A stretch of DNA of 63,886 nt, filler included, from Bigelowiella natans CCMP2755 (lineage: Eukaryota > Protista > Cercozoa): assembly GCA_000320545.1 (NCBI GenBank). It is 4 parts of 4 records of this genome, joined end to end, with 100 filler letters (N's around TTAATTAATTAA, not from the genome) between each part and the next. Parts side by side here need not be neighbours in the genome. Positions count along the whole stretch, not along the records: positions 34,005 to 61,953 come from ADNK01003012.1; 3 more parts are not named here. One strand, written 5' to 3'. The translations under genes were made by a program, and so were the position numbers. The stretch's first letter is position 1; the number at the start of each line of letters is the position of its first letter. Below the pieces are notes generated by a model, which was not told the DNA's origin, did no database searches, and saw nothing but the letters and a program-made list of their open reading frames with translations. Of this stretch, positions 34,005 through 61,883 are shown in pieces.

Positions 34005-34016
34005 AAATTATATTTA

Positions 34017-34062
<46 letters not shown>

Positions 34063-34125
34063 TAGCTCGATGCAGTGTTCTTTTATCCTTCATCCTCATT
34101 TTTTCCAAATCCCTCCCCCCCTTAG

Positions 34126-35403
34126 TATTCTTTGCATTCCGAGTGGCTTGCACCTATACTTGCAAGAAGACAGTCCAGGTTTTTGAAATATTGGAGGGCC
34201 CAATTAACGCCACTTCCATCCCCGATGCCACTTCCCATGGATCGACTCCCGCCTCCAAGAAAGACGTATCAATGTGATTCGGTAGCGATTGATTGCTGCA
34301 CATTGTTAGATATTGTTGCACTACTACGTGTTCTTGCAGAACGTGCTAGAGCCCATAATATATATGCATTAAATAACCCTAATTTGAGCCAACACTACCA
34401 CAATGCATAAAAAGGCCGCGTTCCGACTGAGCTCAAACGCTACAGAAGCTTTACGGAAAATGGCAAACAAATTAGGAGTGACACTCACAGCAGTTATGCT
34501 TGCGATCTACGAGGTTAGCATGAAGCACGTTCAACTGATAATTCACGTTAATGAACGTTGGACGCACTAACAGCCTATCTTAATCTCAGGTCTACCTTCA
34601 TCAATATACTTCAAGCACCATATTGTTGCTTGGAATACAACTGCCTGCACGTGTTGAACCAGAGGTCAGCTCAACTCTAAAGAAGCCATTCAAGGCTTGA
34701 TTTCTATTGCAAGATACTACCAACAACTGATATTACCATTTCTTCTTTATCTGATCTACTGCAATATCTCAAGGTCACTCACATAGTCGGCCCGTTTTCC
34801 AATACCGTGCCAATGAGAATGGACTTGTCGGTACTTACAATCATTCTGCTCATACTTTATCATACTTCCCATTTTGTGATGAATCGCTGGAAACAGGACA
34901 GCCAGCTTCTACCTTCGTATGCGATCTTAGAAGATAGATTCTATGGGATCATTCACCCTGTTCGTTATATTATTGCAATTCTTTTTCAGGGAGATCCAGC
35001 TTTTAAAAGCCTTGTACATGAAACACAACGAAACTTGACAAAAGCTGAAGCTCATCAAGAGTAAGTTTGGTTGTGATGATACCCAGGGATTACTTCGGGG
35101 TTAGAAGAGCATAAGTAGCAGATCTACGATTTTTATTCATTGAATACACTTATAATTATATATATATTCAAATACTCATCTTTTAGGTGTCCACTTGCTA
35201 CCCTTCTGAAAGAGACATCAAACAGATTGTCTAAAAATGATAAGAAAGAAGTTGTGCAATCACCAGCTTCTGCATCATCACCAACACCACCACCATCATT
35301 ATCACTATCCTCACCATCAGCCGCTGCAGCTGATGGTGCTATGATGGGGATTCGCATCGCTCCTGATGCAACTCCAGAAAACCTTCATGCGGTAAATTTG
35401 GAC

Positions 35404-35448
<45 letters not shown>

Positions 35449-37431
35449 TAGATAGAGCCTTCATCATTAAATTACTTCTTGGTCCATTACTGAGCAGCAG
35501 CTGCTTATGCCTCCCATTCACGTATGTTACTATCTTCGCGTTATTACAACACATCTCACTATAGGTGTTTGCTTGGGAGGAAACACCACCTTCTCTGACG
35601 TCACTCGGGACTTCTACTTTGAACGCAATGGTACATAAGAAAGAATCACTTCAAGTCAACATCCCCACCTTGTTTTCTCGATATAGTCATAGAACATGTA
35701 GTCGATGACCGGAAATTCAATTCAACAATCATTATAGAGTGAATGAATGAATATCCAACCGTATCATCATCGATGTGGTAGGCCCTAGGTGTGGAAGCTA
35801 AGACAACGTCGATGGGTGGCATGCAGCTAACACCGCTAGAGGTTCCAATGGCTGCTTCTCCAGGTCGTTCATACTTTCCTCATTTTGTCAATAAAGTGAT
35901 GAATGTATAAGAGCCTCGCACCCAATTGATTTTCGAAGAAGGTCGTCCTATTAATCCCCCCCTCCCCTCCTTTTTACTGCGTGATCCTGCAACTATCAGG
36001 TGGAGGGTGTCTAGTAGCGTTGAATGCGGGGATCGTTCACGGCAAAATAGCAGGGTAAAGCCAACTAAAGATTACAGGGCTAGGAAGCTCATCTTTTGTA
36101 GTCATCGTTATTCGTACGATCATCAATACCACTACCTTTTCGCTAACGAGTTGATATTTCCTAATTTTTTTACAAATCAGGAAACTAGTGTTTCAGACGG
36201 ATGTTCTGGAGCGAGACAGTGGAAAGCGTATGGCCAGGTATTATGATTGAGATCAGAAGAGAGCATATCAACGTTGAATTTCTTCTACGGGGTACTAGAT
36301 AAGATATGGTGTGTGTCAATCCTATTAGGCATTTTGAAGAATTGGCATCATCATTAGCTGCTACTGGCGAGGCTGCAACCTCGTCGATGAAAGTAGGAAC
36401 TTAGACAGCCTCTCTCTCCCTCTCTGTGGTCTGATGAGAAGATATAATATTATTGCTGTTTTGATGTTGTAATGATTGAGGTTGTGATGGTGTACACTGC
36501 CTACTTCCTTTGACATAGATATCGGATCTCTCCATGGTTTCGAGGGAAGAGTATGACCTGGTGAGCCGCCATTTCGATGTGTGCGGCGTGTGTGTATGAA
36601 AGAAGATTGGATCAGTGAATAAGAGAACAAATAGGTGTGGAGCGGTATAGTATAACCGCCGTCACACTTTCATCATTTGTCGAGCAATTGTGATTGAAGA
36701 CAATATGATGATTCCATGTGGACATCATATCGACACTACATTGTGTGAATGTTATTTCTCCCAGTTGTTATTCCACGTTATAAAATGAATCATCTTGCTA
36801 TTGCATGCCACAATCAGCTTCTTGGAACTTTCAACGGAAGGAAGAAGGAGCTACCCAAGAAAAAGTTCCTGCATCACCTGGTTGAGGTAGGAAACAATAT
36901 TATTTATTATTACCGAAAATCGTGAAAATTATTGTAGTTGCTACTGGCACTATTATTGCTTGGAAAGCACAATACACATCGCACACTACTACCAACCACC
37001 ACTGCTACTGCTGCAACTAATACAACTACTACCACACACTTTGTACACAACTTTCTTTCAGGATGCAGTCCTACAACACCCCGACACTATCGCTATTGAG
37101 TCTAAACTCGGCAGGTGCATATGTGAGCTCCATTCTGTAGTTCGTATTAGGCGTTCAGTGATTACTTTTCCACAGTTTTTGCACGGCATGACTTGAAGAA
37201 ATCTTCGTCGTCCTATTAATTATTGCACTACGCACTTGTTCATTAATCGAATCAATGAAATACCTAACAATTTGCAGTTTGACGTATAAAGAGTTAAACG
37301 ATCAAGCAAATTGTTTGGGTAATATATATGGTGTTTGTAGCAATACGGGTCTCTCCTCTCTACTTTTCCTTATGATATTAATGCGTAACATATTACTACT
37401 GAGTGCAAAATATTAATGGCTTATATGTATA

Positions 37432-37476
<45 letters not shown>

Positions 37477-37665
37477 TATATGTTGGCAGCTCGTTATCTT
37501 CGATTCTTATCCGTTGGAATTGACCGCCCTGTTCCTGTAATGATGCCGCGATCTCCAAAACTATTTGTGGTGTTGCTGGCAATACTTAAATCTGGAGGCT
37601 GCTGCATGCCCCTGGTACTACTAATACTACTACTACTCTTTCTACAACAACAACAGCTAGTACTA

Positions 37666-37696
<31 letters not shown>

Positions 37697-40540
37697 ATTA
37701 ACCGGTTTTTATGGTTACTTTCGGGTCCTTTGGAACATATTTATGTGTTAAATGGTAGTTGTTTTCCTAATGTTGCAACAACAACTATCTAGGATCCTGA
37801 TTATCCGGAATCAAGGCTGAAATATATGCTTCGAGAGTCTCAGGTGCGTTATCCATTAGTGGTAATGGGTTATAGTACTTGTGACAGTAATGGCATTATC
37901 GGCCCACTTCGTCAGCATCACCATCAACCTCTAAACAAGGTTTTTTTGGCGCGGACCTACTGCATTATTTAGGCAAAATTAATAATAACTACCAGCAAGT
38001 TGAAGAGAGTGATTCCAATTGAAAGTCTCTCCTCCTCCTCCTCCTCCTCCTCCTCCTCAGCAGGGCCTTTAAAGGTCGGTGCTAAGTTATTGGATATGAT
38101 ATCTTAAAATACCCACACTAGTAACGCTGAGCATGCACCTAAAGCCCTTGAATCATGCCATTAGCAGGTTGCTACTGCTCCTGAGATCCTTGAAGTTGAT
38201 GATACAATCTTTTGGGAAACGATTGTAAGTCCCGGGAACAATCGAGATAACCTTGCGGTACTGAAGATATAATCTCTTCCAATTGATGATATTATTGCAT
38301 ATGTAGTCACCTGATTAGTACTGTTTTCCTCCCTTTTGGAATAACAGAGCATGCCTTCGGCTAGTACTTCTGATTTAGCCTATTTGCTTTACACCTCGGG
38401 ATCGACTGGGAAACCAAAAGGTAGTTTGCTTTTGCTTCTTCCAGCAGCAACATATCGAAGCCTCAGAATGATGATGACGATCATGATGACGATGACGACG
38501 ACGATGATGATGATCGCGACTGTTTTTCATTATTGTATAAGATTTGATGGGGTAATGATTTCTATTATGATCCAATACAGGAGTTATGCTCCGTCATTGC
38601 GGTCTGGTGAATTACGTACTGTGGCATATTGAGTTTTATGAGCAAAGTAATGATCAGTCACACTGTGAGATCACCCTCCTCCCCCCATCCCCTTGATTCT
38701 TCCTCTCGCCTTGTTGCAGCAGTTGTTTCTAACTTCTTTTTCCGATGGCGGTAGCATCTGAAGATAGAGCCGGTCATGTGGCAAGCACAGCCTTCGATGC
38801 GTCAATGGCCGAAACATGGTATACTAATCACACACGTATACTCTAATCACTTCATTAAGCGTTTTATCCTTGTTCACTCATCGTTGTCCATCATCATTTA
38901 TAACCCGCTCTGCTGATTCAAACAGGCCAACTCTCTGTTCTGGGGGTACTCTCGTGTTGTTGCCTGATTCCAATATTCGGTTGGATCCAAAGCTGCTCTG
39001 TGAATGGTATGCTGATGAAGGTAATAAGGAGATACTAATAACACTACAGGAGCTTCTAACAGAAGAGAAGAAATTGCAAAAAAATGTTTTCACCCTCGTG
39101 TTATGTGATTCACTTTAATACGTCCCATGTGTCTAATTCCCATCACTAGTGTCCCATGTGTCTAATTCCCATCACTAGTGTAAAGAGTGACTCGATTGTT
39201 GACCTTAACCATACCCACAGGCATTCATATTTCCTTCCTTACAACTCAACTGGCGGAAAGCGTTCTCGCTCTCGGAAGCGCCTCTGCACCTAGCACAGCT
39301 GCTGCTGCTGCTGATACTCCAGCAGTCAAGAAATCGATGGCCGATGCAGGGAAGGCTACGAATAAACTGCTCGTACCAACTCCAACCTCCCGCAGTAATG
39401 TTGATAAGATCTTAGATGCAGCTTCTGGTTCTGCTTATCCTAAACACCTCCGACTACGAATCTTATTCACTGGTGGAGATAAACTGCATGGTGGCCCTCC
39501 AAAGAGCGCCCCATTCGAGCTTGTACGTGTTCTAACACTGCTGCTGCTAATACGTTCTTCAACACCCCCCCCCCCCCCCCCTTTCCTGCAACGCGTCTTG
39601 GTTTCACTTGAACAATAGCCTAAGTTCAGGATTTTATGCTTTTTGTTCGCTTTGAAAGGTGAATATTTATGGACCGACTGAAGCAACAATTAATGTAACC
39701 CTCTGCAAAGTTCCCCATGGCCAGGCGACACCACCTCCGATTGGCAAACCGGTAACAACCAAACAACAGCAGTTGCAGTAATAGCAGTTTTTGTATGATC
39801 GTAAAGCAAGAAGAGGCCAGCATGTTCGTATTAATTGAGAGATGTCGGTGAAATACCTAGTGTAGTTCAGTGGCGGATGGTGCTGGATGGAATATGTTGG
39901 GAATATATAATCCGTCGGCACATTTCTATGAATGATCTAAAATGATTTGGTTTTTTAATGATTATATTTTTAAAAAGTATTATTGTTGTTATTCCTAACA
40001 GGTTCCAAATATGCGAGTGTATATTCTCACTCAAAACTTGAAGCCATGCCCGCTTGGTGTTTATGGAGACTTATATATCGCAGGGGTTTATTCCAACAAA
40101 CTAAATAATAACCACTATCCTCACTACAACGGGATTGAATGTTCTAATTTTCTCCTTTTACTTACATTATACAGGTGCAACTTGCGAGAGGGTATCTCAA
40201 TAGGCCTGATTTGACGAGAGAACGTTTCCTTCCTGATCCATTCTTTGTTTCTACCCGCGAAGAAAAGCAGGGAGTGAAGGAAGGAGGAGGACGAGAAGGC
40301 GGTCCTGAGGAAAGTAGGATGTATAAAACAGGAGATGGTAGTATCTACGACAACTGTACAAAGAACTAACAAATTTATCTTGAAATTTAGAATTATATCT
40401 GCAACTACTACCCATGTATTCCATCGTGATTTTGACGTTTGTTCTGTGTGGTGATGTTCCTTGGCGTAGTTGCACGGTTTCTTCCATCTGGAGAGGTAGA
40501 GTTCCTGGGTCGAAGAGATACACAGGTACACACAAATATC

Positions 40541-40620
<80 letters not shown>

Positions 40621-43600
40621 GAGAATGATATATCCTAAATTCTTCCTCTCTGCTGTGTTGTGCATGCAGGTTAAAATTCGTGGGTACAGAATTGAGCTTG
40701 GAGAAATTGAGACAGTCCTTATAAGCGTTCCTGAGATATCCGCTGCAACGGTCATTGCTAGAGGGGAGGAAGATTCAATGAATAGTGGCAAAATTCTTGT
40801 TGCTTATATTGTCCCAGTTAACTCAATAGGCGTGAAACTTAAGGTACCAATCACAACAGCAATGATTGCAATTTGGTGATCGATCTTTTTATATCATTTT
40901 AAGTGCAGCATTATTGGTATATACCCTGCCATTACTTTACACATTTTCCTGCAATCTTGATCACTATAGCGGTGCTGTTTTGATGAGTGACGATGAAAAA
41001 GGATGGTAACGTCGATGGTGAATGGATGATTGGATATAACTGTTCGTATACTGTTGCAGGGTACCAATGAAGACAAAGGCCAGCAAACCGAAGTAAAGGA
41101 AGATAAAGATTCTATGGATTTTATTCGCCTAAAAGCAAGTGATGCTGTGAAGGCTGCACTACCTGCATATATGGTCCCAACAGCCTATGTGGTGCTTCCG
41201 TCTCTTCCTCTCACTCCCAATGGAAAGATAAAGAGGAATGCTTTGCCTGCCCCATGCGCTCAGGACATGAGGGCTACAGATGGGAAGAAACACTACAAAT
41301 ACACTGCGCCCTCCAGTAAAGCTGAGTGTCTGATTGCTGATGCTGTTGCGGATACTTTGGGGTTATCCAGGACCGGAATATCTATGTCTGATAGCTTTTT
41401 CTCCCTCGGTGGCCATTCTCTCAGTGTGTCAAGACTTTTGAGCAGAATAAGGATATTAGGCATCATGCATCTTTCAATAACAGATGTGTATAAATCTCCG
41501 ACACTAAAAGACCTTGCTTCTCTTCTTACCGACGAGCAAGCTACTAATCGATTAGCATTATTACGTGGCGGTGGTGATGTTGATAGCATCGAAAAGACTG
41601 GACAACAGGCACTTGTGAATAATACAGAGAACACTGAGAAACTAGTTTCAGATCGAGACCGCCAAAACAATAATACCCTTACACCTAATATAGATTCAGG
41701 AGAAAGGAAAGATAGACCGCTATTATTGCTTGAAGATGAAGGTCGGGAAAGCGATTTGAAAGAGGAAAATGCGCCTTATTCTTCCTTATCCCAAGCACCG
41801 AATTTCACTATGACCTTGGAACAAATAGAAAAAATGTATTCATGTAAAGATCAAGAAGGGATGCATTTGTCGTTTAATCAAGAATCAATGTACACTCAGC
41901 ATAGACGAAACTCTAATGCTAGTAGAGCATATAATACAAGATTTGCTGCAGAGATGAAAAGAGAGGAAGTTGACTTCAAACGGCTGCGAAAGTGTCTATG
42001 GATGCTTCATAAGCACCATACTTCACTTCGCACACGCTTTTCACCTGGAAAAGATGGAGATTCCCCTCGTCAGCATATAGTTCCTTTATCTTCGTTTGAA
42101 ATGGATTATGTTGAGATCGACGACTTCAAGCAGCAATCTCAAAATCTACTCAAAGAAGTGCGAAATCTGGCCAGCAAGAGATTTGACCTGGAGAAGGGAA
42201 ATGTCTCGAGGATAATAATAGCTCACAAGCAAGATGGCAAGACAAGTATATTCACATGGGCAATACACCATATTTCCATCGATCTATGGAGTTTTGCAGA
42301 ATTACTCTCAAGCTTGGGAAAAGCATACGCTTCAACAGGAAACCCATCAATGACAGTACAGGGTCCTCCTCCTCTCCAGTATATTCAAGTAGTTCCATCA
42401 TTAAGAAATTGGGAATCCGAGCGGAAGGAAAAGGTGCATGGTTTCTGGCAACAGACCTTAGCACCGCCATTGCCGGTATTGGATATGCCATTGGATAGAC
42501 CACGACCGCCAAAGCAAAGCTATAGAGGAGCTTCCATGGGGCTGGACATACCTCCTGAGCTTGCAACAAGAATCAGGGCATTAGCCATGGGAGAAGGCGT
42601 CTCCCTCAATACACTGATGCTTACTGCGTATTTCATTTTGCTTCAAAAATATACGCACCAAGACGACCTCATCGTCGGGGTTCCAACAGCCGGAAGAGAC
42701 CAGCTTGAACATGAACGATGTTGTGGCTACTTCGTCAATCCTGTACCCTTGAGGCTCTCCCTGATTGGAGATCCACGATTCGTAGATACTCTGAAAAGGG
42801 CACATTTAGCCCTCACGCAGGCCATGGAGCATTCCACTATTCCCATCGCTGAGCTGGTGAAATCCGTTGTGAAAGTTGGTAAAAGAGATACAAGTAGGCC
42901 CATGCTGTTCCAGACGCTCTTTGTCACTCAAAAGCCTCACAAACTAGGAAATGAAGGGTTGGCATTCTTCTTCACGGATACGCCTGGAGTATCGCTGCAA
43001 CTAGAAGCACACGATTCGGCAGCAACAAAATCTCCACCCTCTGGTGGCTCTCATAAGTTGGAGATGAAGTCTTTCGTGCTTGGACAAGAATTCGCAGAAT
43101 ATGATATTGCCGTCATGATTGCTGAATCTCCAGCAAGGCTAGCAGCTAGTTTCCAATACAACACTGATATATTCAATAAAGATACAATCAACCGTTTTTC
43201 GAGGCACTACCTTGCTATATTATCATCAATTGTTAGAAATCCAAGCGCCTATCTCTCCAAGGTGTCTGCAGTGCCTCCCTGTGAGTACCGTGATATTATG
43301 CGGTGGAATAGTGTCAAATTACCTTTTCAAACAAGAAAGTGCTTGCACGAGATTGTAGAAGAAACGGTACAAAGGCATCCTGATAGCGTTGCTGTGGAGG
43401 GTGTGGTTGGTGGAGGGAAGAAAGAGCGACAACAATTTACCTATCGGAAGCTGAATGAAAAGGCGAATCAATTGGCACATTACCTGCGCTTCAAAGGAGT
43501 TGAGAGTAATAGTTTGGTGCTAATCTTACTTAAGAGATGTCCGACGTATATCGTCTCCCTGCTTGCAGTTCTAAAAGCTGGAGGAGCTTGTGTACCAATC

Positions 43601-46600
43601 GACCCAAAGTATCCTCCGGAAAGAATCAAACACATAGTTGAACTTGCTGGTTCAAACTGCCTTGTTTTGACAGAGAAGAAACTATTTGAGGAGAAGTTTC
43701 CTAATTTCTTTTCGGAAAAGAAGAATGCAGCCACTTCTACTTCATCGTATTTGCAGCAGCAACAACAACAACAACAAAAGCAACAACGACCGTATCCTCT
43801 TCCCCCTCTTTTCCTAGATTCAGATAGCAATCTGTCAAAGCTTTTAGCGCGAGGATGCACTGAAAATCTACCTAGAGCACCAAATCTTTCGCCAGAAAGT
43901 ACTGCATTTGTCATTTTTACTTCCGGAAGTACCGGTAAACCTAAGGGTGTCATGTTGCGACATCGAGGATTGGCGGCTTACATCGCTTGGCATATTGAAA
44001 AATTTGAAATGTCTCAGAGTGACAGGGTTTCGCACCTTGCATCCGTAGCATTTGATGCCTCTATGGCGGAGACCTGGCCAACACTGGCTATTGGTGGTAC
44101 TTTGGTTCAAATACCAGCAGGAGAACGAAGGGTTGTTGCAGATTCAAAGTGCTTCGATCGATGGATCACAGAAAACAAAATCACAGTATCCTTTCTACCT
44201 ACTGTTGTTCTGGAAGCATTTCTTGATATGAAGCACGATAACTGCCATCATGCTTTGAGGCTAGTTTTTACAGGCGGAGATAAGCTACACCGAGGACCAC
44301 AGAAGGGGGCAAAGTATGCTGTTTTGAACAACTATGGGCCTTGCGAAAACACAATTGGATGTACATGCATAGAGGTGCCATTCGACTACAAGCCTCCGCC
44401 CTTTATCATCGGCTCACCAGCTCCAAATACACAATTGTTTGTACTGGATGATCATAGGCAGATGTGTCCAATCGGCGTCAGTGGAGAGATTTACCTTGGT
44501 GGCCAGCAACTAGCCAAAGGGTATCTCGCTCGAAAAGATCTGACAAACCAACGATTCGTTGCATCTCCATTTAATCCTTCTGAACGCATTTACAAAACAG
44601 GGGATATGGGGCGATATTTACCTGGTGGCCAAGTAGAGTTTCTGGGTAGACGTGATACACAAGTCAAAATAAGAGGAAATAGAATCGAAATGGGGGAGGT
44701 TGAGGCAGCGTTTCTATCCTTCAAAGGGGTTAGAGAAGTATGTGTTGTGTGTCGTGAAGATGATGATGGAGCTGGTGGGCGGCCTCGTAAGTCATTGGTA
44801 GCATATGTTGTACCACAAAGCGGATTCTTAACAGAACAGAATAGCTATTCCAAACGCAAAGAAGGCGGTGAAAAAGAGAAAACAAACACGGGAAAAGAAA
44901 TGCAAGCATCACGCACCAGTAGTTCTTCTTCGAATGGTAGAAAGCTTGGTCAAAATGATCATCGGTTGGATTTGAGATCGCTGCGAGGGCATTTGAGGGC
45001 TACGTTACCAGAATTTATGGTTCCTTCTGCTATCGTTGTCCTCGAGCGATTTCCTCTCACTCCCAATGCTAAAATAGACCGTAGAGGCTTACCTCGCCCA
45101 GAAAGCGATGATGTGGCAGCAGGAGCTGACCGAATAGCTCCTCGCACGCCAGCAGAAACTACCGTGATCTCTGTTGCAGAGCAGGTTCTGGGTCTCCCCA
45201 AGAATAGTGTGGGAATGAATGATAACTTCTTCGACTTAGGAGGCCATTCACTGTTGGCTGCAAAGTTGGTATCTCATTTGGAGGTACAGCTTACAATCAC
45301 AGTGCCATTCGCTGCCATCTTTGACGAGCCTAATTTCGGGGCTTTGACACGACGCATTACTCTAGCTCGCTCCAATCCAAACGCAGCCCAACGAATACAA
45401 GACATTAAAGTCATCAAAAGAGAGGAATCAAACACAGTGGAAATAGGGACTCCGAGAAGTCCATTTGGAGATTATGACTCAAAATTTGCCGCACCACGAC
45501 TATCAGGAGATAGAAAACAGATGAGACGTTCGAATTCCTCCTTTACTATGCTCACCCAATCATCAGATGGCAACCGATATGGACCCAAGTCGTACAAAGA
45601 TTCTCCGATGTCTGAATTCTTGCAACAACAGCAACACATATATGATGAGAACAACATGGATGCTGCCGCTGTTCCGAGCAACCCTCTCACTCCAATGCGT
45701 TTAGTGTCGGAGGACACATCTGCAGCGGTTGGCATCATGGATGACGACATCACACAACAGACTGAAGGAACTGAACGCGCAGGTACTGATATCGTAATAA
45801 ACAGTGGTAATAGTCCCAGAACAGCGCGTCTTGCTCCACCAGCCTCTGCTCTGGCTACTTCTCCCTTCTCGTACTCGCATTTAACTTTAGGAACTACGCC
45901 TTTAAGGACGAGAAGGGGAGGGTTTGCAATAACTCCTTCCGCAGCTGCCTCTAATGAAACACCTCTTCATCGTGGGGGTGATGGTAATAGTAGTGTTGCT
46001 AGCAGGGAAGTTGCAGGAGCAGTCTCACCATCACTACAATTTGAGCCTGGGGAAGGGTATATGACTTACAATCAGCAGAGTCTTTGGTTCATGCACTCGC
46101 TTGATGTTGCAGCTTCAAACGCGTATAAATGTTCATTTGCTATGGAGGTTGCAGGAGATCTCAATGGTGGTAAGGCATGCACGTGGGAAGACAAGTACAC
46201 AACAATCCGTGCTGCTTTTCAGCGCTTGGTTGATTCACACTCTAGTCTTCGTACAAGTTTTTGCGAGAGAAGAGGACAACCTGTCCAGAAAATCAGATCT
46301 CCTGGCTCTCCTGTAGATATTAAAGTAGTAGAAGAAGAAGGTAAGGGGGGGGCTCGATCAAGATGGCAGCACAATGACAACTCAAAGAATTTGCTTCTGC
46401 AAGCAATTCAATCCGAGTTGGAAGAGCCATTTGATTTAGAGACGGGTCCTATAGCGCGAATGCGTATTTTCCCATTATCACCATCGTCATCGTCATCGCC
46501 ATCATCGCCTTGGGCAGTTATAGTTTTTGTTGCTCACCACATCGTTGTCGATGGTTGGTCGGTCAAACAAATACTTCTTCCCAAGTTCAAGCAATATCTC

Positions 46601-49600
46601 CAAAATGAAATTAGGACGCCATCTTCCTCCTTGCTAGAAATAACACAAGATTTTGAATCTGATGATGATGCCGCTGGCGACGCTATTGATTATGCACTAT
46701 GGCAGCAAGGCTTAGTTCGGGGAGGGGAGGGAAGAAGGTTGTGGAATTACTGGAAAAGGCAGTTAGCTGGTCCATTACCTACCTTGGAAATACCAACCGA
46801 TTTTCCTAGACCTCCTCGGCAATCATTTGAAGGAGGGTTGTATTCAATAGATATCCCCAACACATTAGCTGCTAAGCTCATGGCAACAAGTAAGAAGGAA
46901 AGGGCGACTCTTTTCATGATTTTTGCAGCTGCATACTTTACACTATTGCATCGGTACACATCGCAGGTGGATATTATAGTCGGAACCCCAATGGCATGCA
47001 GAGGAAGAAGTGACGTAGAAAGTTTAGTAGCCCATCTTGTCAATCCAGTAGCACTAAGGATCAATATTTCTGGTGATCCCTCATTGAAAGAATTGATCAA
47101 ACGAATTCGGACTGCTACTGTAGGAGCTTTCACGCATCAAGAACTTCCGTTCCCTCTTATTGCAGAAAGAATCCAAAAATATCGGGATTCATCACGAAAT
47201 CCTGTATTCCAAGCACTATTCGCTCTGAATCAGTTCTCTAGCTCCAAACACGAGAATATAAATAGTGCTCAAGGCGATGAAAAGTCCAGTAGTAGTCCGG
47301 AGATTTCTCACACTTGTCCCAGATTTGAATCTGTAGATCTTGGAGAAGTGGGTTCCCCATTTGATCTTCAGTTCATCGTAGATGTCAACGAACCTACCAA
47401 TAGAAGTAGAGGTGAATCGGCTAAGATAACAGCCAAACTTCAATATGCGTCGAGGTTGTTCCTTCCACAAACAATCGAATTTATGGGAAGACATCTGATG
47501 TCCATTTTGAATGCAATTGTCACTGATTCAACAACGCCTGTATCAAAGGTCTTGCTTGTTTCTAGAGACGAAAAGAAAATGCTGCATCAATGGGGTGGGT
47601 ATGATGATTCCACATCCCTGTCACAGAAGAACGGGAGAAACGATACTGGCAGGAGAACAGGGGGAGGAGTTCTTGCTTCTATACTTGGTGCAGCCACCAG
47701 ATTTCCTTCCTCGCTAGCGCTCTGTTCAAAAACCTCTCACTTAACGTACCGCGGTCTCTTGGAATTGTCTGCTCATATTGCAACAGAGATATATGGAAAG
47801 CTAAGATCAAGACTAAGAGAAGATTTGAAGAATGATAGTACCGGTAGTTGTTGTGTGGTTGGAGTCATGATGCAAAGAAGTACAGTGTGGATTGCATCCA
47901 TTATTGCAGTGTGGTTGTTGGGCGCTGCGTATGTTCCAATAGACCCTGATTACCCACAAGCACGCATTCAACATATGCTTAAGGATTCATCCGCAGTAGC
48001 TCTTCTGATTGATAAAGATGTTGGTGACGATGATGACAATGATAATAAAGATAATGGTGCTAATGCAACGACAGCAAAAGTGAAGGGAATTAGTTCAATT
48101 GTTATTCCAATCTCCGGCAAGCTCAGAACAGATGATGGAAAGGTTCCCAATGGCTACTATCATCGAGAGTGGAAAACACCAAAGTATGATCCTACTAGCC
48201 TGGCGTATATCATATATACTTCTGGATCAACAGGGCGGCCAAAGGGGGTCATGGTGCCTCATGGTGCCTTAGCATCTGTGACATCATCTATGAAGAGGGA
48301 ATATAAAATCCAGCATACGCATAGAACTACACAGCTATTTGGGCCTGGATTCGACCCTGTAGGCTTGGAGCTCTGGCCATTTCTCACATCTGGGGCAAGT
48401 ATTCACGTTGTGCCTGAATTACTGCGAAAAGATCCTCCTTCGCTTGTCAAATGGATAAAACGGCAGCAAATAACTCACTGCCAAACTCCAACGCCTATTG
48501 CGCACGCAATGATGAAAGAAAATTGGGAAAATACAGCCCTTCAGGTGATGTCTGCTGGTGGGGAGAAGTTAATGGTTGATTTTATGGGAGAAACAACGGA
48601 ATTTGCTCTGAAATCAGCAAATGAGAACGTGTGTCGTCGGCCGTTTAGGTTTGATAATCACTACGGTCCTAGTGAGTGTACGATAATCGCAACCCTTTTC
48701 AAAGTGCCTGTGGGATTCAAAGGGGGGCCTCCAATAGGAAGGCCTATTTTGGGATGCTTCTGTCTGGTTCTGGAGACAACATCGATAAGGCACGGAGATG
48801 ATGGGGGTGATGCAACAAACAAACGAACAGCACCACAATATTGTCCTTTATTAGCTCCAATAGGTGTATTCGGAGAACTTTGTTTGGCAGGAGATCATCT
48901 AGCCAAAGGGTATCTAAATTTACCCGAAAAGACCTCAAAGACGTTCGTGAATCATCCAAATTATGGCAGAATATACCGAACGGGTGATAGGGCTAGATGG
49001 AATCGTGATGGATACTTAGAATTCGGTGGAAGATTAGACAGACAGGTCAAAGTGCGTGGCTTCAGGATAGAATTGGGAGAAATTGAAACTGCATTGCTCA
49101 GCGCAAGTAGCGCTGTCAAGCAGGTAGCGGTATGTGTAAGGAAGAAATCTGGAGATTACAGTGGGGAAGCTTTGGTGGCGTATGTAGTTCTAGGAGATTC
49201 TAAATCTAGCAGAGCAAGTCAAAAACCAGAACACCTGAAGAATCACGGGGTGCTGGTTCAAAAGCTTGAATTAAGTACAGAAGATGAGGCCACGCTGAGA
49301 GCTTCGGCAAAAGAGGCACTTCCTGAATACATGGTTCCCTCTGTATTTATCAGGCTGTCTAGATTTCCCCTCACACCGAATGGAAAACTAGACAGAAAGG
49401 CTCTACCCATGCCAAATTGGTCTGAAATTGCAGCGAGAAATGCAACAAATATTACTGCATTCGTAGAACCAGAAGGAGCGTATGAAATCAAGGCTGCTCA
49501 AGTGTGGAAGTCTGTCCTCGCTGTAGATGTAATTGGAGCAAATGACAGCTTCTTTGATTTAGGAGGGAATTCTCTCACAGCGTCATCGGTGATTGTCGGG

Positions 49601-51277
49601 CTTAGAGATGCTTTTGGAATTACCCTTACGATATCAGATCTGTTTGAAAATCCGAGTGTGCGTGGGGTTGTAAGGAGGATAAAGATTATCAAGGGTGAGA
49701 AGGACGATGCTGTACACCCTTCAAATATAGGTGTAGATGAAAAGAAAGCTAGCCAAATTAGAAGCAATTCGACAGAGTTATCGTCTACCCAAAAGGCCAT
49801 GTTGGAAGACATTGAGAAGATATTGGGTGAGATTAAATTGCAAGAAAAATATCCAGATAGTATTAGTATCCATTCATTAGAGTTGAAGAATGTAAACATG
49901 CCCTTTACCGCAAAAATACAACCAAAACCAGTCGAAGAGTCTCAAACAGTAGTCTTTCTAACCGGGGCTACAGGTTTCTTAGGAACCTTTATCCTTGCAG
50001 AGCTATTGAAATTAACAAATGCCACGATATATTGCGTAGTGAGGTGTAAATCTAAATCCTCAGCCAGCACTAGTGGTGGTAGTGGTGCTCTTGCAAATGA
50101 TGCCTTTGAGAGATTTCCTGAGGCAGATGATAGAATCCAAGAATCTTTGGAAAAATATGGATTATTTTATTTAACTGCGAATAGAGATCGTGTTTTTGGT
50201 ATCCCTGGAGACCTAAAGGAGCCTAGGCTTGGATTGAATAAAAAAATATTTAAAACGCTGTCAAACCGTGTGGATTGGGTAATACACTGCGGGGCATGGG
50301 TAAACTCTGTATTACCTTACAGTCAACTTAGAACTGCCAACGTGTTCGGTACAAAGGAGGTACTAAGACTGGCTACCTCGGGCCGAAAATTGGCACTGGT
50401 GAGCTACATATCAACCCTTTCCGTATTTGATGCTGGAAGAGGGAAAAAGATCAAGGAGACTGATGAACTGCCTGCTGTGACAAGGACACATGGAGGTTAT
50501 CCCCAAACTAAATGGGTGTCGGAGCGGCTCATGTTGGCATGCAACGAGAAGGGAATTCCATGTGAAATCTACAGGCCAGGAAGAATAACTGGAAATTCGC
50601 GTACAGGCCATGCAGCGACAGAGGACTTTCAATGCCGTTTAATCAAAGGATGCATTCAACTTGGGGCCTATCCTGACCTTGATTGGATCATGGATATGAC
50701 GCCTGTAGACTATGTATCTCGTTCGATTGTTACTGCTGGAGTGAGAGGACTGATGCAGCTGGAGGCTGATGGTTCCTCTTCACAACAGACAAGTGGATGG
50801 TCAAAACCATGTTCTATTTATCATTTGTGCAACCCAAACCCAATTCAGCTCTCTCAGCTTTTCCAGTGGCTGTACAGGTTCGGATTCCCTGTGAAAGAAA
50901 CGACATATACCCAATGGCGTGAAATGATTATTCAGGCGGCAAAGAATAGTAGCGCTCCAAAAAAGAAAAGGTTGACAATTAAGGTGAACGAAGAGCAAAA
51001 GCGAACCACAAGCTCGTCTGACACCAACATTGTAAATCCACTTGTTGCGGTGCTTCCACTTCTCTTGCCGGAGAAACAGAAAATGGGCGATAGGAAGACA
51101 ATGCCACTTTTTGATACTTCGAACACGGAGGCAAGACTCACGAAAATCTCAGAAGAACTGATGTGCCCAGCCATCACTGATGATTTGTTGGATACATACT
51201 TCGGATATTTTGTTTCGTCGAGATTCCTCCCAGCTCCAAACTACGATCAATTTCAGTTTGAAATGGACAAATATTAG
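34126..51277 (+). CDS. Multimodular non-ribosomal peptide synthetase, 5'-partial: C1(half)-A1-T1-C2-A2-T2-C3-A3-T3-R (terminal thioester reductase)
   Basis: About 30 small exons (34126 to about 40843) encode the C-terminal half of C1 ([34 protein letters not shown]) and A1 ([55 protein letters not shown]). They splice (KLK|GTNE) into one exon at 41060-51277 with T1 GGHSL (Ser 41417), C2 HHISIDL (42266), A2, T2 GGHSL (45248), C3 HHIVVDG (46535), A3, T3 GGNSL (49571) and R (TGATGFLG at 49961; YPQTK at 50498). Confidence 0.95.
39122..39179. repeat. Perfect 29-bp tandem duplication in an NRPS intron
   Basis: gtcccatgtgtctaattcccatcactagt occurs twice. Confidence 0.95.
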
Positions 51278-52837: not shown

Positions 52838-52929
<92 letters not shown>

Positions 52930-54688: not shown

Positions 54689-56290
54689 CTATATCAATTT
54701 CGGTCTCAAACTCATCTCATCCTGACTTTGACGGAGAAATCTCGCGATTGGTATGCTTCTGCTCCTGCGATCATCTGAATCTGATACAGACAACAAGTTT
54801 ACATAAAGCAAAATTGATTTTTTTATCTCAATACCATCATTGAACGATGTTTGAGCTGCCTTCTCTATCCTCTTAATAAAATTTACAGAATCGCTTAGCA
54901 TTATCTTGTTCATCAACCAGACTGGTAACTGATAGACAAAACTTTGATCAAAACGACGAAGTACGGTGTTGAGAGCATTCGAGATTATATTGATTTCGTC
55001 TACCGATCCTCCAACATCAACATGCTGGACAAAGGTAAATTCACACTCTCCACTTTGCTTGAGGGGTGTGACGCGATTTGCCCCAAGGATCATGTTGGCA
55101 CGGACGCACCCTAAAACAGGCAAGTAGTACTCCTCAGTCATCGCTCCTTTGCATCATAACAGACTTAATTTTGTTGTTACCCACCTTTCAAACCGCTAGG
55201 ACATTTTGGATGATCTGTAGATTTATTTAAAATCAAAATATCCCCTTTCGCTGTCCTTAAAAGCTGGACGAATGTGACAAAATCGCGAGGACTAAAGAAG
55301 GGAACCCCGTACGTTTTTGACCTACATGAAAGCATGTGTTAGATGGACTTTTTTGAGGACGAGAGGAATACATTTTGCACCAGGATATCTTCGTGTAGCC
55401 ATTGATCTTTTCGATATCCTCACCGTCAGAATACATAGGATTAAACTCCCGGATTTTATCAACTGAGGAGCTTTGAAATAACTTGAGGACATTTTCGGCA
55501 TCTGCTTTTATTCTCGCGTGACCTCGGATCTGCTTCAATTTACTGCCCTTAACAATGCGAGAATAGATAGTTACACCATCTTCTTCTGTTTCTTTCTTCC
55601 ACCCTCTATCATCACTATATATCGCTTCTAAAGCCTTGGGAATCAGGTCATCCGGAGGAGAAGTAGATTCATGGAGGTGGCTCGATGTCTCTTTTTGTTC
55701 TCTGATAGGGAGTTTAGCTATTTTCAAAAAATCTCTGATTTTAAGAGAAATTCTTTTGGCTGTGTCTGAAACTTTGTCTGCCGCATTTGGCAGAACCTAG
55801 GTAAAAGAAATATGAAAACGTTGTGGTATGCATTTCCCTCTGTGATCTTGCAAACTCTCGCTAATTCATACAAATCATGCTTCTACATGCCTAATACTGC
55901 TACCATCACCACTAATACTGTTCAAAAGCACATCCATAATGCAAATATTTGCATTTTTTTTACGTGAAATGATGTTGAAGGTGTCGTAGAGGCAAGTCCA
56001 TGCTCCTTATGGATGATGCTGCAATCTTCCTCAGGCTTCATAGATTGCCTTGAAAAGGCTGCACCACATAAGCAGACTGTAACTAAGGCCTGTTGTAAAG
56101 ACTCCGTTATATTTGAATTCGGGTTGAATAACATGATCGGTTCATTTTCTTCTGTACCGTTAGTGAAAGAGCTGCAATACGTCTCCGTGTAACTCGATTT
56201 GCATCTTCTTTTTTCGAACCAGTTTCAGAACTGGCATAGCCCGCGCATTTAATGCCACAGAATAATCCATGCGGGCCTCCCATCTATTCA
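54689..56290 (-). CDS. START-domain lipid-binding protein (5' exons uncertain)
   Basis: Exons: GWKKETEEDGVTIYSRIVKGSKLKQIRGHARIKADAENVLKLF..ISW|SKTYGVPFFSPRDFVTF..|GCVRANMILGANRVTP..EFTFVQHVDVGGS|LPVWLMNKI. The W..G, PRDFV, VRA, D.GG and P.W motifs of START domains are present. Confidence 0.8.
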
Positions 56291-56705: not shown

Positions 56706-57823
56706 ATGGACGGCACTTCGAAATCACAACTGAAGCAGAAGATAAGCAAGAACAAAGGCATCACCGTTTCCGATACTACAACTAGTAGCAAAACCTCGAT
56801 AGCAAAGCAGGTGGACGCTAAGGATGATGTTGCTCTTCCGGATACTGCAGGTTTCAATGATTGCTCTAATTGTTGGAAGAATATCAATCTGAAGTTTCTC
56901 TAATCAAAGGTGGCCTAGCCTTTAGTCATGCTCCAGAGCATGGTATATCTCTCTTTCTAGCACGACGAACAAAAACAATTCACTTCATTCGGCATGCAGA
57001 GGGAACTCACAACGCAGTGAATAGGTCATACTTGTAATTTTATAGTAGACGTTATGAAAATATTAATTTTTTTGCACATAATAGAGCGTATGGTGATGAC
57101 ACTCCTTGTGTTTCCTCAACACCGGGAAGTTGGAAACAAATCGATGCTCGTCTCACACACGCAGGTATCAAGCAATGCCTCGAGGCAAGAAGTGGAGTTT
57201 TACTTTCTGGGGTGAAACCTGAACTTGTCGTCGTGTCTCCACTCACACGAACCCTTCAAACGGCACATATTATGTTCCATTCCAAAGGGATACCATTTAT
57301 TGTTCATGATATCTGCCGCGAGCGCTGGGGGAAGTATACTTGTGACAAACGTCGTACCGCAAAGGAAATAAAGGATGATATGACTGGAATATTTGCAAAA
57401 ACACATGAATCTATTGACTTTGACTCCTTCGGTTTCGAAGAGGAAGAGGACAAAAAATGGACTGAGAAACGAGAGTCGGATGAAAGTTGTTGTGCACGCG
57501 GAGTCGATCTTCTCAAGTGGCTCGCAACTCGCCCAGAAAATGACATTGCAGTTGTAACACACAGTTCGTTCCTGCGACATCTATTCCGTGCCTTTGGGTT
57601 TTCCTTGGATAAAAAAGATATGAAGAAGTTACACCGTAAGCATGGAAATGCAGAAATAAGATCTGTAACCCTGGCTTTGCATCGTGGGTTTTATCCTGAA
57701 GGTACATGGACTGAAGATGATGTTTTCATTCCGGCTCATCCATCGTTTCGGAAAGGAAAGTGGGCATATGCAGCCGCTTCCATTCAAAAAATGCATGCCA
57801 AAATTCGTCCTCCAAAGCCTTGA
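56706..57823 (+). CDS. Histidine phosphatase superfamily (phosphoglycerate-mutase-like) protein
   Basis: Spliced RRTKTIHFIRHAEGTHNAVN|..DARLTHAGIKQC..ELVVVSPLTRTLQTA..CRERWGKYTCDKRR..RESDESCCARG..IAVVTHSSFL. The RHxE/G, SPLxRxxQTA and second catalytic His motifs are present. Confidence 0.92.
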
Positions 57824-57914: not shown

Positions 57915-57982
<68 letters not shown>

Positions 57983-61622: not shown

Positions 61623-61799
61623 GTGTTTGTTGTTGTTGTTGTTACAGCATGATAGCAGTAGTAGTAGTAGTGATCTTTGGGGGGATGGATGACGGCGGGT
61701 TTCAAAAATGGTTGAAACAGCATATTATATATTTCTCACCATTATACTGCTAATACCTGCGTGGATCCTACTACTACTGCTATTGCTGCTGCTAACGAT

Positions 61800-61805
<6 letters not shown>

Positions 61806-61883
<78 letters not shown>

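What the first reader, a model, noticed from the sequence alone, without database searches (positions are those of the whole stretch)
34126..51277. Large multimodular NRPS with terminal reductase in an intron-rich algal/protist nuclear genome
All core motifs look intact across three modules plus an SDR-type R domain (TGATGFLG, YxxxK), and the final exon has 3405 uninterrupted codons, so the gene is probably functional. Multimodular NRPSs are typical of bacteria and fungi and uncommon in algae, and I know of no product for this one. It has spliceosomal introns, so it is not a bacterial contaminant. No phosphopantetheinyl transferase or transporter gene is seen next to it in this window.
Basis: partly seen in the sequence, partly recalled or inferred. 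Interest (0 to 1): 0.9.

Follow-up and report, generated by a model that had tools for sequence, protein, structure and literature searches.

The report
Known Bigelowiella three-module NRPS gene
This is a real, intact nuclear gene of the alga Bigelowiella natans for a three-module peptide-making enzyme that ends in a reductase; it was already reported in 2015 as the largest microalgal enzyme of this kind, and its product is still unknown.

Summary
Window 34126-51277 (+) encodes an NRPS with the layout C*-A-T-C-A-T-C-A-T-R. Module 1 is split by 30 GT-AG introns. The rest lies in one 10,215-nt exon of 3405 codons, 41060-51274.

The protein is 100% identical to JGI Bigna1 protein 82242 of Bigelowiella natans (4453 aa). 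Its 4453-aa length (about 490 kDa) and ten domains match the "largest microalgal NRPS" of Shelest et al. 2015 (490 kDa, 10 domains), and O'Neill 2020 discusses that same reported NRPS. The paper's text names no protein ID, so this link is inferred. So the finding is true but already known, and no product has been reported.

Details added here:
- The first C domain lacks both catalytic histidines (HH replaced by D-A/Q). The same holds in three colinear relatives on eukaryotic metagenome contigs. It is probably an inactive relic, so module 1 most likely acts as a loading module.
- The A-domain pocket residues are nearly identical across the four proteins. This suggests one conserved tripeptide.
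- The R domain is closest to MxaA, so release is likely as a C-terminal aldehyde or alcohol.
- The JGI model mis-splices its first exon in this piece.
- All introns lie in module 1, with no codon-usage break between module 1 and the long exon.

The parts
34126..36560 (+). Exons of the C-terminal two-thirds of the first condensation-like domain (C1*). Its N-terminal part and its His-motif position lie upstream of this piece.
   Evidence: tblastn against the orthologue L001 module 1. JGI exon map. Alignment.
34126..34281 (+). Corrected first exon in the piece (YSLHSEW...QCDS). The proposed intron is 34282-34414 (GT..AG) and the next exon starts at 34415. The JGI model instead reads 34124-34178 in another frame.
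   Evidence: 49% identity to L001 over 55 aa. Read from the sequence. The corrected join has the same length as L001.
34179..41059 (+). Intron-rich part of the gene: 30 GT-AG introns of the JGI model, 30-321 nt, median 134 nt, GC 37%.
   Evidence: Exact splice reconstruction. Intron statistics. Splice-site consensus.
36818..41236 (+). Adenylation domain A1, made of many small exons plus the first 69 codons of the long ORF (A10 motif [10 protein letters not shown] at 41207-41236).
   Evidence: Motifs A3-A10 are seen in the alignment.
41060..51274 (+). Last exon: 10,215 nt, 3405 codons, no intron.
41333..41527 (+). Carrier domain T1 (LGGHSL at 41405).
   Evidence: Pfam PP-binding. Motif.
41855..43297 (+). 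Condensation domain C2 (HHISIDLWS at 42266).
   Evidence: Pfam Condensation, E 2.8e-74. Best solved-structure hits are Txo1 and TycC C domains.
43358..45082 (+). Adenylation domain A2.
   Evidence: Pfam AMP-binding. NCBIfam TIGR01733 scores 394.6 against a cut-off of 317.4. Motifs.
45161..45358 (+). Carrier domain T2 (LGGHSL at 45236).
46061..47584 (+). Condensation domain C3 (HHIVVDGWS at 46535).
47693..49396 (+). Adenylation domain A3, with insertions.
   Evidence: Pfam. TIGR01733 scores 308, just under the 317.4 cut-off. Motifs.
49499..49681 (+). Carrier domain T3 (LGGNSL at 49559).
49928..51274 (+). Terminal thioester reductase R (TGATGFLG at 49961, GGYPQTK at 50492, YRPG at 50570).
   Evidence: Pfam NAD_binding_4, E 1.6e-61. 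TIGR01746 scores 277.3 against 213.35. MxaA 4u7w, E 1.2e-68.
51275..51277 (+). Stop codon TAG.

Best explanation
This is the Bigelowiella natans nuclear NRPS gene, JGI Bigna1 82242. It encodes a single polypeptide of about 4450 residues with the order C*-A1-T1-C2-A2-T2-C3-A3-T3-R.

Shown here: the domain order, intact catalytic motifs in A1-A3, T1-T3, C2, C3 and R, spliceosomal introns, and host-like codon usage.

Inferred mechanism:
- An Sfp-type PPTase encoded elsewhere primes the three carrier domains.
- C1* has lost both catalytic histidines, so it is a structural relic. A1-T1 therefore acts as the loading module.
- C2 and C3 form two peptide bonds, giving a T3-bound tripeptide.
- The MxaA-like R domain releases it with NAD(P)H as a C-terminal aldehyde, possibly reduced further to the amino alcohol.

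Three colinear relatives on eukaryotic metagenome contigs share the dead C1* and nearly the same A-domain pocket residues. The product is therefore probably one conserved tripeptide. The building blocks cannot be named.
For: - Identity: 100% match to Bigna1/82242.
- Domains; motifs with coordinates.
- Long ORF: 3415 codons with no stop, against 94-247 stops in the other frames.
- Introns and composition: 30 GT-AG introns. GC3 is 0.39 in module 1 exons and 0.38 in the long exon, and the RSCU correlation of 0.74 is as high as between the two halves of the long exon.
- C1*: the His-motif position reads ADAAVCD, ADALVCDTWS, VDQSIWDKWS and ADQTIADFCS in the four proteins, while C2 and C3 keep HHxxxD.
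- C1* origin: its profile matches ordinary elongation C domains (Txo1, E 1e-65) far better than an E domain (TycA E, 3e-7).
- Pocket residues: A1 DAAF(F/Y)GIINK in all four; A3 DPLQSGHIIK in both B. natans and L001.
- R domain: best solved relative is MxaA, E 1.2e-68, with the ST, YxxxK and RPG positions aligned.
- Eukaryotic relatives: L001 has a GTAAGT..ACAG intron and a MINDY neighbour. L002 has a CRAL_TRIO neighbour.
- Same N-terminus: the start of the B. natans model and of L001 align from the first Met.
Against: - No transcript or protein evidence was obtainable here. A search with the T-R end found no B. natans transcript fragments, which says little either way.
- About 35 residues of C1*, just after the His-motif position, are missing from both the JGI model and this piece. 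The piece starts in a (TA)n repeat, which could mark an assembly gap.
- Several module 1 exon choices are uncertain.
- A3 scores just below the NCBIfam cut-off for adenylation domains.
- The pocket residues were read by motif register, not by alignment to GrsA.
- Aldehyde versus alcohol cannot be decided from sequence.
Confidence: 0.8

Rival explanations
1. C1* is a working starter condensation domain that N-acylates the first amino acid. The product would then be a lipo- or acyl-tripeptide aldehyde, as in lipopeptide aldehydes.
For: An N-terminal C domain before the first A domain is the usual layout for lipo-initiation. C1* is retained in four lineages and keeps the conserved Asp and WS of the motif.
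Against: Both histidines are replaced by D-A/Q in all four proteins. The C1* profile resembles elongation C domains. C1* is the least conserved domain, at 27-28% identity against 38-47% for C2. No acyl-loading gene was seen nearby.
Confidence: 0.08
2. Only modules 2 and 3 plus R are functional, giving a dipeptide aldehyde that cyclises. This is the 'two-module NRPS with reductive end, keto-piperazine' reading in O'Neill 2020. Module 1 would be decaying or mis-assembled.
For: Only T1-C2-A2-T2-C3-A3-T3-R lies in the uninterrupted exon. The module 1 model has doubtful exons and a missing stretch. O'Neill 2020 describes such a two-module enzyme on a B. natans contig. Whether that is this contig could not be checked.
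Against: A1 and T1 keep all core motifs with no frameshift or stop across about 30 exons. A1 pocket residues are identical to those of L001 and L002. C2 would have no donor substrate without module 1.
Confidence: 0.08
3. The gene is an unexpressed relic or pseudogene.
For: Part of C1* is missing from the assembly.
Against: A stop-free 10.2-kb frame where other frames carry about 100-250 stops. All catalytic motifs are intact. Pocket residues are conserved across relatives at 34-55% identity.
Confidence: 0.03
4. The sequence is bacterial contamination in the assembly.
For: The domain set and the nearest named homologues outside this family are bacterial: myxobacteria, Nostoc, Thermoanaerobaculia.
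Against: 30 GT-AG introns. GC and codon usage are uniform across the gene. The nearest relatives sit on eukaryotic contigs. Bacterial hits reach only about 29-40% identity per domain.
Confidence: 0.01

Closest known systems
Bigelowiella natans NRPS of Shelest et al. 2015 (BMC Genomics 16:1015) and O'Neill 2020 (Mar Drugs 18:90)
   Same: Judged to be the same gene. The 4453-aa model is about 490 kDa with 10 domains, matching 'largest microalgal NRPS ... 490 kDa ... 10 domains'.
   Different: The papers' text gives domain layout only and does not name the protein ID. The loss of the C1 histidines, the mis-spliced exon, the metagenomic relatives and the intron polarity do not appear in the passages read here. 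O'Neill mentions a possible epimerase, which was not supported for this gene.
Aureococcus anophagefferens NRPS, JGI 70689 (460 kDa)
   Same: Reported to have the same domain arrangement.
   Different: Its sequence was not retrieved here, so orthology is untested. P0022 (4209 aa, about 463 kDa) has a similar size but its source is unknown.
MxaA terminal module of myxalamid synthetase (C-A-T-R; PDB 4u7w)
   Same: Closest solved relative of the R domain (E 1.2e-68), with the Rossmann motif and Tyr-Lys positions aligned. It releases the chain by reduction.
   Different: It is a myxobacterial PKS/NRPS hybrid and is not colinear beyond the last module. That MxaA reduces through to the alcohol is from my own knowledge; whether this R does so is unknown.
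Dipeptide or oligopeptide aldehyde NRPSs with terminal R (for example AusA aureusimine synthetase, LgrD of linear gramicidin)
   Same: C-A-T...R logic and reductive release. The NCBIfam AusA model hits the C, A and R parts weakly. LgrA is the best solved match for A2.
   Different: All scores are far below those families' cut-offs. Module number and pocket residues differ. This enzyme is eukaryotic and has an inactive N-terminal C domain.
Colinear relatives L001+P0004, P0022 and P0383/L002 (uncultured eukaryotes)
   Same: Same ten-domain order. HH replaced by D-A/Q in C1. HHxxxDLWS in C2. FDASMAETW in A1 and A2. Near-identical pocket residues. Their R domains group together in a tree, SH-aLRT 96.
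   Different: They are 34-55% identical per domain. Their genes are single long ORFs or have very few introns, whereas B. natans has 30 introns in module 1.

Membership tests
Modular (type I) nonribosomal peptide synthetase | Adenylation domains with core motifs A3-A10 | tested here: met
   SGSTGxPKG, FDxS, NxYGPxE, Y(K/R)TGD, GRxDxQVKxRGxRIExGExE and PxTxNxK are present in A1, A2 and A3. Pfam AMP-binding E 4e-76 and 2e-51.
Modular (type I) nonribosomal peptide synthetase | Carrier domains with the phosphopantetheine-accepting Ser (GGxS) | tested here: met
   LGGHSL, LGGHSL and LGGNSL at 41405, 45236 and 49559. Pfam PP-binding three times.
Modular (type I) nonribosomal peptide synthetase | Condensation domains with HHxxxDG | tested here: met
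   C2 has HHISIDLWS and C3 has HHIVVDGWS. C1 does not meet this feature (see the starter C row).
Modular (type I) nonribosomal peptide synthetase | Priming by a phosphopantetheinyl transferase | not testable with these tools
   None was recognised in the larger ORFs of the 10.7 kb downstream. The rest of the genome is not available here.
Thioester reductase (TIGR01746; MxaA-type R domain) | Score above the curated cut-off, a Rossmann TGxxGxxG motif, and a catalytic Tyr-Lys (YxxxK) | tested here: met
   TIGR01746 scores 277.3 against 213.35. TGATGFLG and GGYPQTK are present. These positions align to MxaA.
Amino acid adenylation domain (TIGR01733) | Score above the curated cut-off | tested here: inconclusive
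   A2 scores 394.6 against 317.4 and passes. A3 scores 308, just below, and is split in two stretches by insertions. A1 was not scored because its exon model is uncertain.
Starter (lipo-initiation) condensation domain | Catalytic HHxxxDG in the N-terminal C domain | tested here: not met
   The motif reads (A/V)D(A/Q)xxxD in all four proteins. For B. natans this residue stretch comes from the JGI model, upstream of the piece.
Epimerisation domain (suggested for a B. natans NRPS by O'Neill 2020) | Closer to E domains than to C domains | tested here: not met
   C1*, C2 and C3 all match Txo and TycC C domains best (E 1e-40 to 1e-65). TycA E appears only for C1*, at 3e-7.

The most novel reading that the evidence does not exclude
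This gene is one member of a conserved, eukaryote-borne NRPS lineage found in B. natans and at least three uncultured protists. The lineage keeps an inactivated N-terminal C domain and almost invariant substrate pockets. If so, distant protists make the same tripeptide aldehyde or alcohol, which points to a conserved physiological role rather than a sporadic secondary metabolite. In B. natans the gene gained about 30 introns only in its first module.
Probability: 0.4. Interest if true: 0.5.

Novelty: already known. Interest (0 to 1): 0.3.

Why it matters
Multimodular NRPSs are rare in eukaryotic algae: Shelest et al. found them in 7 of 32 species. No algal NRPS product of this type is known. 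This gene is already the published textbook case, so rediscovering it adds little.

The added details are modest but usable:
- The corrected exon and the list of doubtful exons tell anyone cloning the cDNA what to check.
- The dead first C domain predicts a free N-terminus.
- The conserved pocket residues in four eukaryotic relatives suggest one shared product, which could be looked for by metabolomics.
- Thirty introns in module 1 and none in 10.2 kb, without any codon-usage break, makes a clean case for studying polar intron gain or 3' intron loss in a gene whose relatives are intron-poor.

Tried and rejected
- A profile of C1* searched against 1.84 billion representative proteins was swamped by giant bacterial NRPSs with many C domains. 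None of the 150 listed proteins was a closer relative when re-checked by BLAST.
- The metagenome DNA scan first failed for lack of conserved stretches. It then returned only two weak generic C-domain loci at 25-30% identity.
- A search with the T3-R end alone found no near-identical fragments, so there is no transcript-derived evidence. The best hits were 33-39% identical cyanobacterial T-R proteins.
- I tested whether the long exon is a recent foreign insert. GC3 and RSCU show no break, so I rejected this.
- I tested whether the introns are a repeated 'introner' family. They share only (TA)n runs, so I rejected this.
- Substrate prediction failed. The ten-residue pocket strings occur in no paper searched. 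From memory, A3 resembles the Gly code and A1/A2 resemble branched-chain hydrophobic codes, but that is a lead, not a test.
- I could not tell which of O'Neill's four contigs corresponds to this piece.
- The R-domain tree has a weak backbone, so no bacterial donor can be named.
Full report
**What is there.** The piece (34005-61953) begins and ends in (TA)n microsatellites. On the + strand an ORF of 3415 codons runs 41030-51277. The other five frames of that span carry 94-247 stops.

Pfam on the whole ORF and on five pieces gives the following, in ORF residues:
- the end of an A domain (A10 motif at residue 60)
- T 102-166
- C 276-756
- A 777-1268
- T about 1378-1443
- C 1678-2185
- A 2222-2786
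- T 2824-2884
- NAD_binding_4 from residue 2975

Upstream, tblastn with modules 2 and 3 and with an orthologue finds C- and A-domain fragments in many short exons between 34126 and 40843.

**Whose gene it is.** The ORF is 100% identical to a 4453-aa protein labelled jgi/Bigna1/82242 (fgenesh1_pg.89_), from the Bigelowiella natans nuclear genome. Mapping that model onto the window gives 31 exons. All 30 introns are GT-AG, 30-321 nt long with a median of 134 nt and 37% GC. Residues 1-165 of the model lie upstream of the piece.

**Already published.** Shelest et al. 2015 (PMC4661987) state that the largest microalgal NRPS known exists in B. natans, with a subunit of 490 kDa and 10 domains. They add that Aureococcus anophagefferens has a protein with the same arrangement. 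A protein of 4453 aa is about 490 kDa, and C-A-T-C-A-T-C-A-T-R is ten domains, so I take this to be that gene, although the text gives no protein ID. O'Neill 2020 (PMC7073580) re-mined the B. natans contigs with antiSMASH, cites the three-module NRPS, and lists further NRPS fragments. No product is reported in these or other papers found. The finding is therefore correct but not new.

**Corrections to the gene model.**
- The JGI model reads 34124-34178 in a frame with no homology. The orthologue on locus L001 aligns at 49% identity to the other frame from 34126 (YSLHSEW...QCDS).
- A splice of exon 34126-34281, intron 34282-34414 (GT..AG) and exon 34415 onward restores the C-domain segment, with exactly the length seen in L001.
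- JGI exons 34897-34959 and 35452-35481 have no counterpart in any relative. Both are multiples of three, so skipping them keeps the frame.
- After 37843 the model lacks about 25 residues present in all relatives. Reading on to a donor at 37950 would supply a plausible strand.
- About 35 residues of C1, just after its His-motif position, are absent from the model and from the piece. They may lie in an assembly gap at the (TA)n boundary.
- None of this introduces a stop or frameshift into conserved exons.

**The first C domain is catalytically dead.** In the JGI model the position of HHxxxDG reads AADAAVCD. Three colinear relatives were found:
- L001: ENA ERZ23491473 scaffold_2353, P0004 plus the ORF before it.
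- P0022: ENA ERZ1426827, a single ORF of 4209 aa.
- P0383 on L002: JGI 3300082588, a single ORF of 4770 aa.

Their C1 motifs are ADALVCDTWS, VDQSIWDKWS and ADQTIADFCS. So both histidines are replaced by D-A/Q in all four proteins, while C2 (HHxxxDLWS) and C3 (HHxxxDGWS) stay canonical.

A profile of the four C1 domains matches ordinary elongation C domains (Txo1 1e-65, TycC 4e-56) far better than an epimerisation domain (TycA E, 3e-7). C2 and C3 behave the same way. I therefore see no support for an E domain in this gene, and none for lipo-initiation.

The B. natans model and L001 align from the same first Met, so C1* appears to be the true N-terminus. My reading, which is inference, is that C1* is a relic of an elongation domain whose upstream partner was lost, kept as a scaffold for A1.

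**The relatives are eukaryotic.**
- L001 has a canonical GTAAGT...ACAG intron inside C1 and a MINDY deubiquitinase neighbour.
- L002 has a CRAL_TRIO neighbour.
- The P0022 contig has a PGAP1-like neighbour.

Per-domain identity of B. natans to P0004 is 42-60%, and to P0022 it is 36-46%. The best bacterial hits in the fetched sets reach 29-40%. In an R-domain tree the four proteins fall in one group (SH-aLRT 96) together with two other proteins, P0121 and P0410, whose origin I did not check. The backbone among the cyanobacterial and other R domains is unresolved, so no donor can be named.

**Substrates.** Pocket residues were read by motif register on a MAFFT alignment of the twelve A domains. 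This was not an alignment to GrsA, so it is an inference.
- A1: DAAF(F/Y)GIINK in all four proteins.
- A2: DAAFFGNIGK in B. natans; DAAFYGSIGK, DAAFYGIINK and DAAFYGLIAK in the relatives.
- A3: DPLQSGHIIK in B. natans and L001; DPLLTGHIIK and DPLLTGHVMK in the others.

D235 and K517 are kept, which fits alpha-amino acid substrates. The strings occur in no paper searched. From memory only, A3 is nearest the Gly code and A1/A2 the branched-chain hydrophobic codes; this was not tested. The strong conservation argues for the same or a very similar tripeptide in all four organisms.

**Release.** The R domain passes the NCBIfam thioester-reductase cut-off (277 against 213). Its best solved relative is MxaA (E 1.2e-68), with the Rossmann motif, the ST, the YxxxK and the RPG positions aligned. 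It is therefore a canonical hydride-transferring R domain. Whether it stops at the aldehyde or goes on to the alcohol, as MxaA does by my knowledge, cannot be told from sequence.

**Gene architecture.** All 30 introns lie in about 2.6 kb of module 1 coding sequence. The following 10.2 kb has none. GC3 is 0.39 against 0.38, and the RSCU correlation is 0.74, against 0.78 between the two halves of the long exon. There is thus no sign that the long exon is a recent foreign insert. The introns share only (TA)n runs, so they are not a repeated introner family. The relatives are single ORFs or have very few introns. The polarity therefore arose in the B. natans lineage, either by 5'-biased intron gain or by loss of 3' introns through recombination with a partial cDNA. 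I could not distinguish these.

**Surroundings.** Downstream lie a weak START-like gene on the minus strand (54689-55727) and a histidine-phosphatase gene on the plus strand (57212-57823). No PPTase or transporter was recognised among the eight larger ORFs scanned. Short exons could have been missed.

**Verdict.** Novelty is 'already known'. The mechanism I commit to is loading by A1-T1, two condensations by C2 and C3, and NAD(P)H-dependent reductive release of a free-N-terminus tripeptide aldehyde or alcohol. I put this at about 0.8 for the overall reading. The substrates and the oxidation state of the product remain open.

Noticed in passing
window 34179-41059 versus 41060-51274: Extreme intron polarity: 30 GT-AG introns lie in about 2.6 kb of module 1 coding sequence and none in the next 10.2 kb. 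Codon usage and GC3 are the same in both parts. Related genes in other eukaryotes are single ORFs or nearly so.
   Followed up: partly
window 34124-34178, 34897-34959, 35452-35481, 37843-38165: The JGI gene model Bigna1 82242 looks mis-spliced. Its first in-piece exon is in the wrong frame. Two small exons have no counterpart in relatives. About 25 conserved residues are missing after 37843.
   Followed up: partly
window 34009-34060, 35404-35445, 37422-37481, 40536-40617, 52841-52926, 57919-57965, 61798-61881: Many dinucleotide microsatellites, (TA)n, (AG)n and (TC)n, occur in introns, between genes and at both ends of the piece. The piece probably ends at assembly breaks caused by them.
   Followed up: no
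window 39122-39181: A perfect 29-nt tandem duplication (2.1 copies) lies in the intron just before the long A1 exon 39221-39522.
   Followed up: no
window 39250-39420 (within exon 39221-39522) and 40205-40265: A1 carries a 52-residue Ala/Ser/Thr-rich insertion and a 20-residue Gly/Glu-rich insertion, both absent from the relatives. They may be real loops or unrecognised in-frame introns.
   Followed up: no
window 54689-55727 (-) and 57212-57823 (+): The neighbouring genes are a weak START-domain-like gene in at least two exons and a histidine phosphatase (His_Phos_1, E 5e-12). Neither has an obvious link to the NRPS.
   Followed up: partly
L001 9889-9898 and 6926-7010: The orthologous gene on ENA scaffold_2353 is broken by a 10-N scaffold gap inside T1, which is why it was called as two genes. 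It has one canonical spliceosomal intron in C1.
   Followed up: yes
P0121 and P0410 (proteins): Two further proteins group with the family's R domains (SH-aLRT 96). One is a T-R protein with PH domains from a Logan assembly. The other is a 4684-aa NRPS named after linear gramicidin synthase C that also has a leucine carboxyl methyltransferase domain. Their origin was not checked.
   Followed up: no
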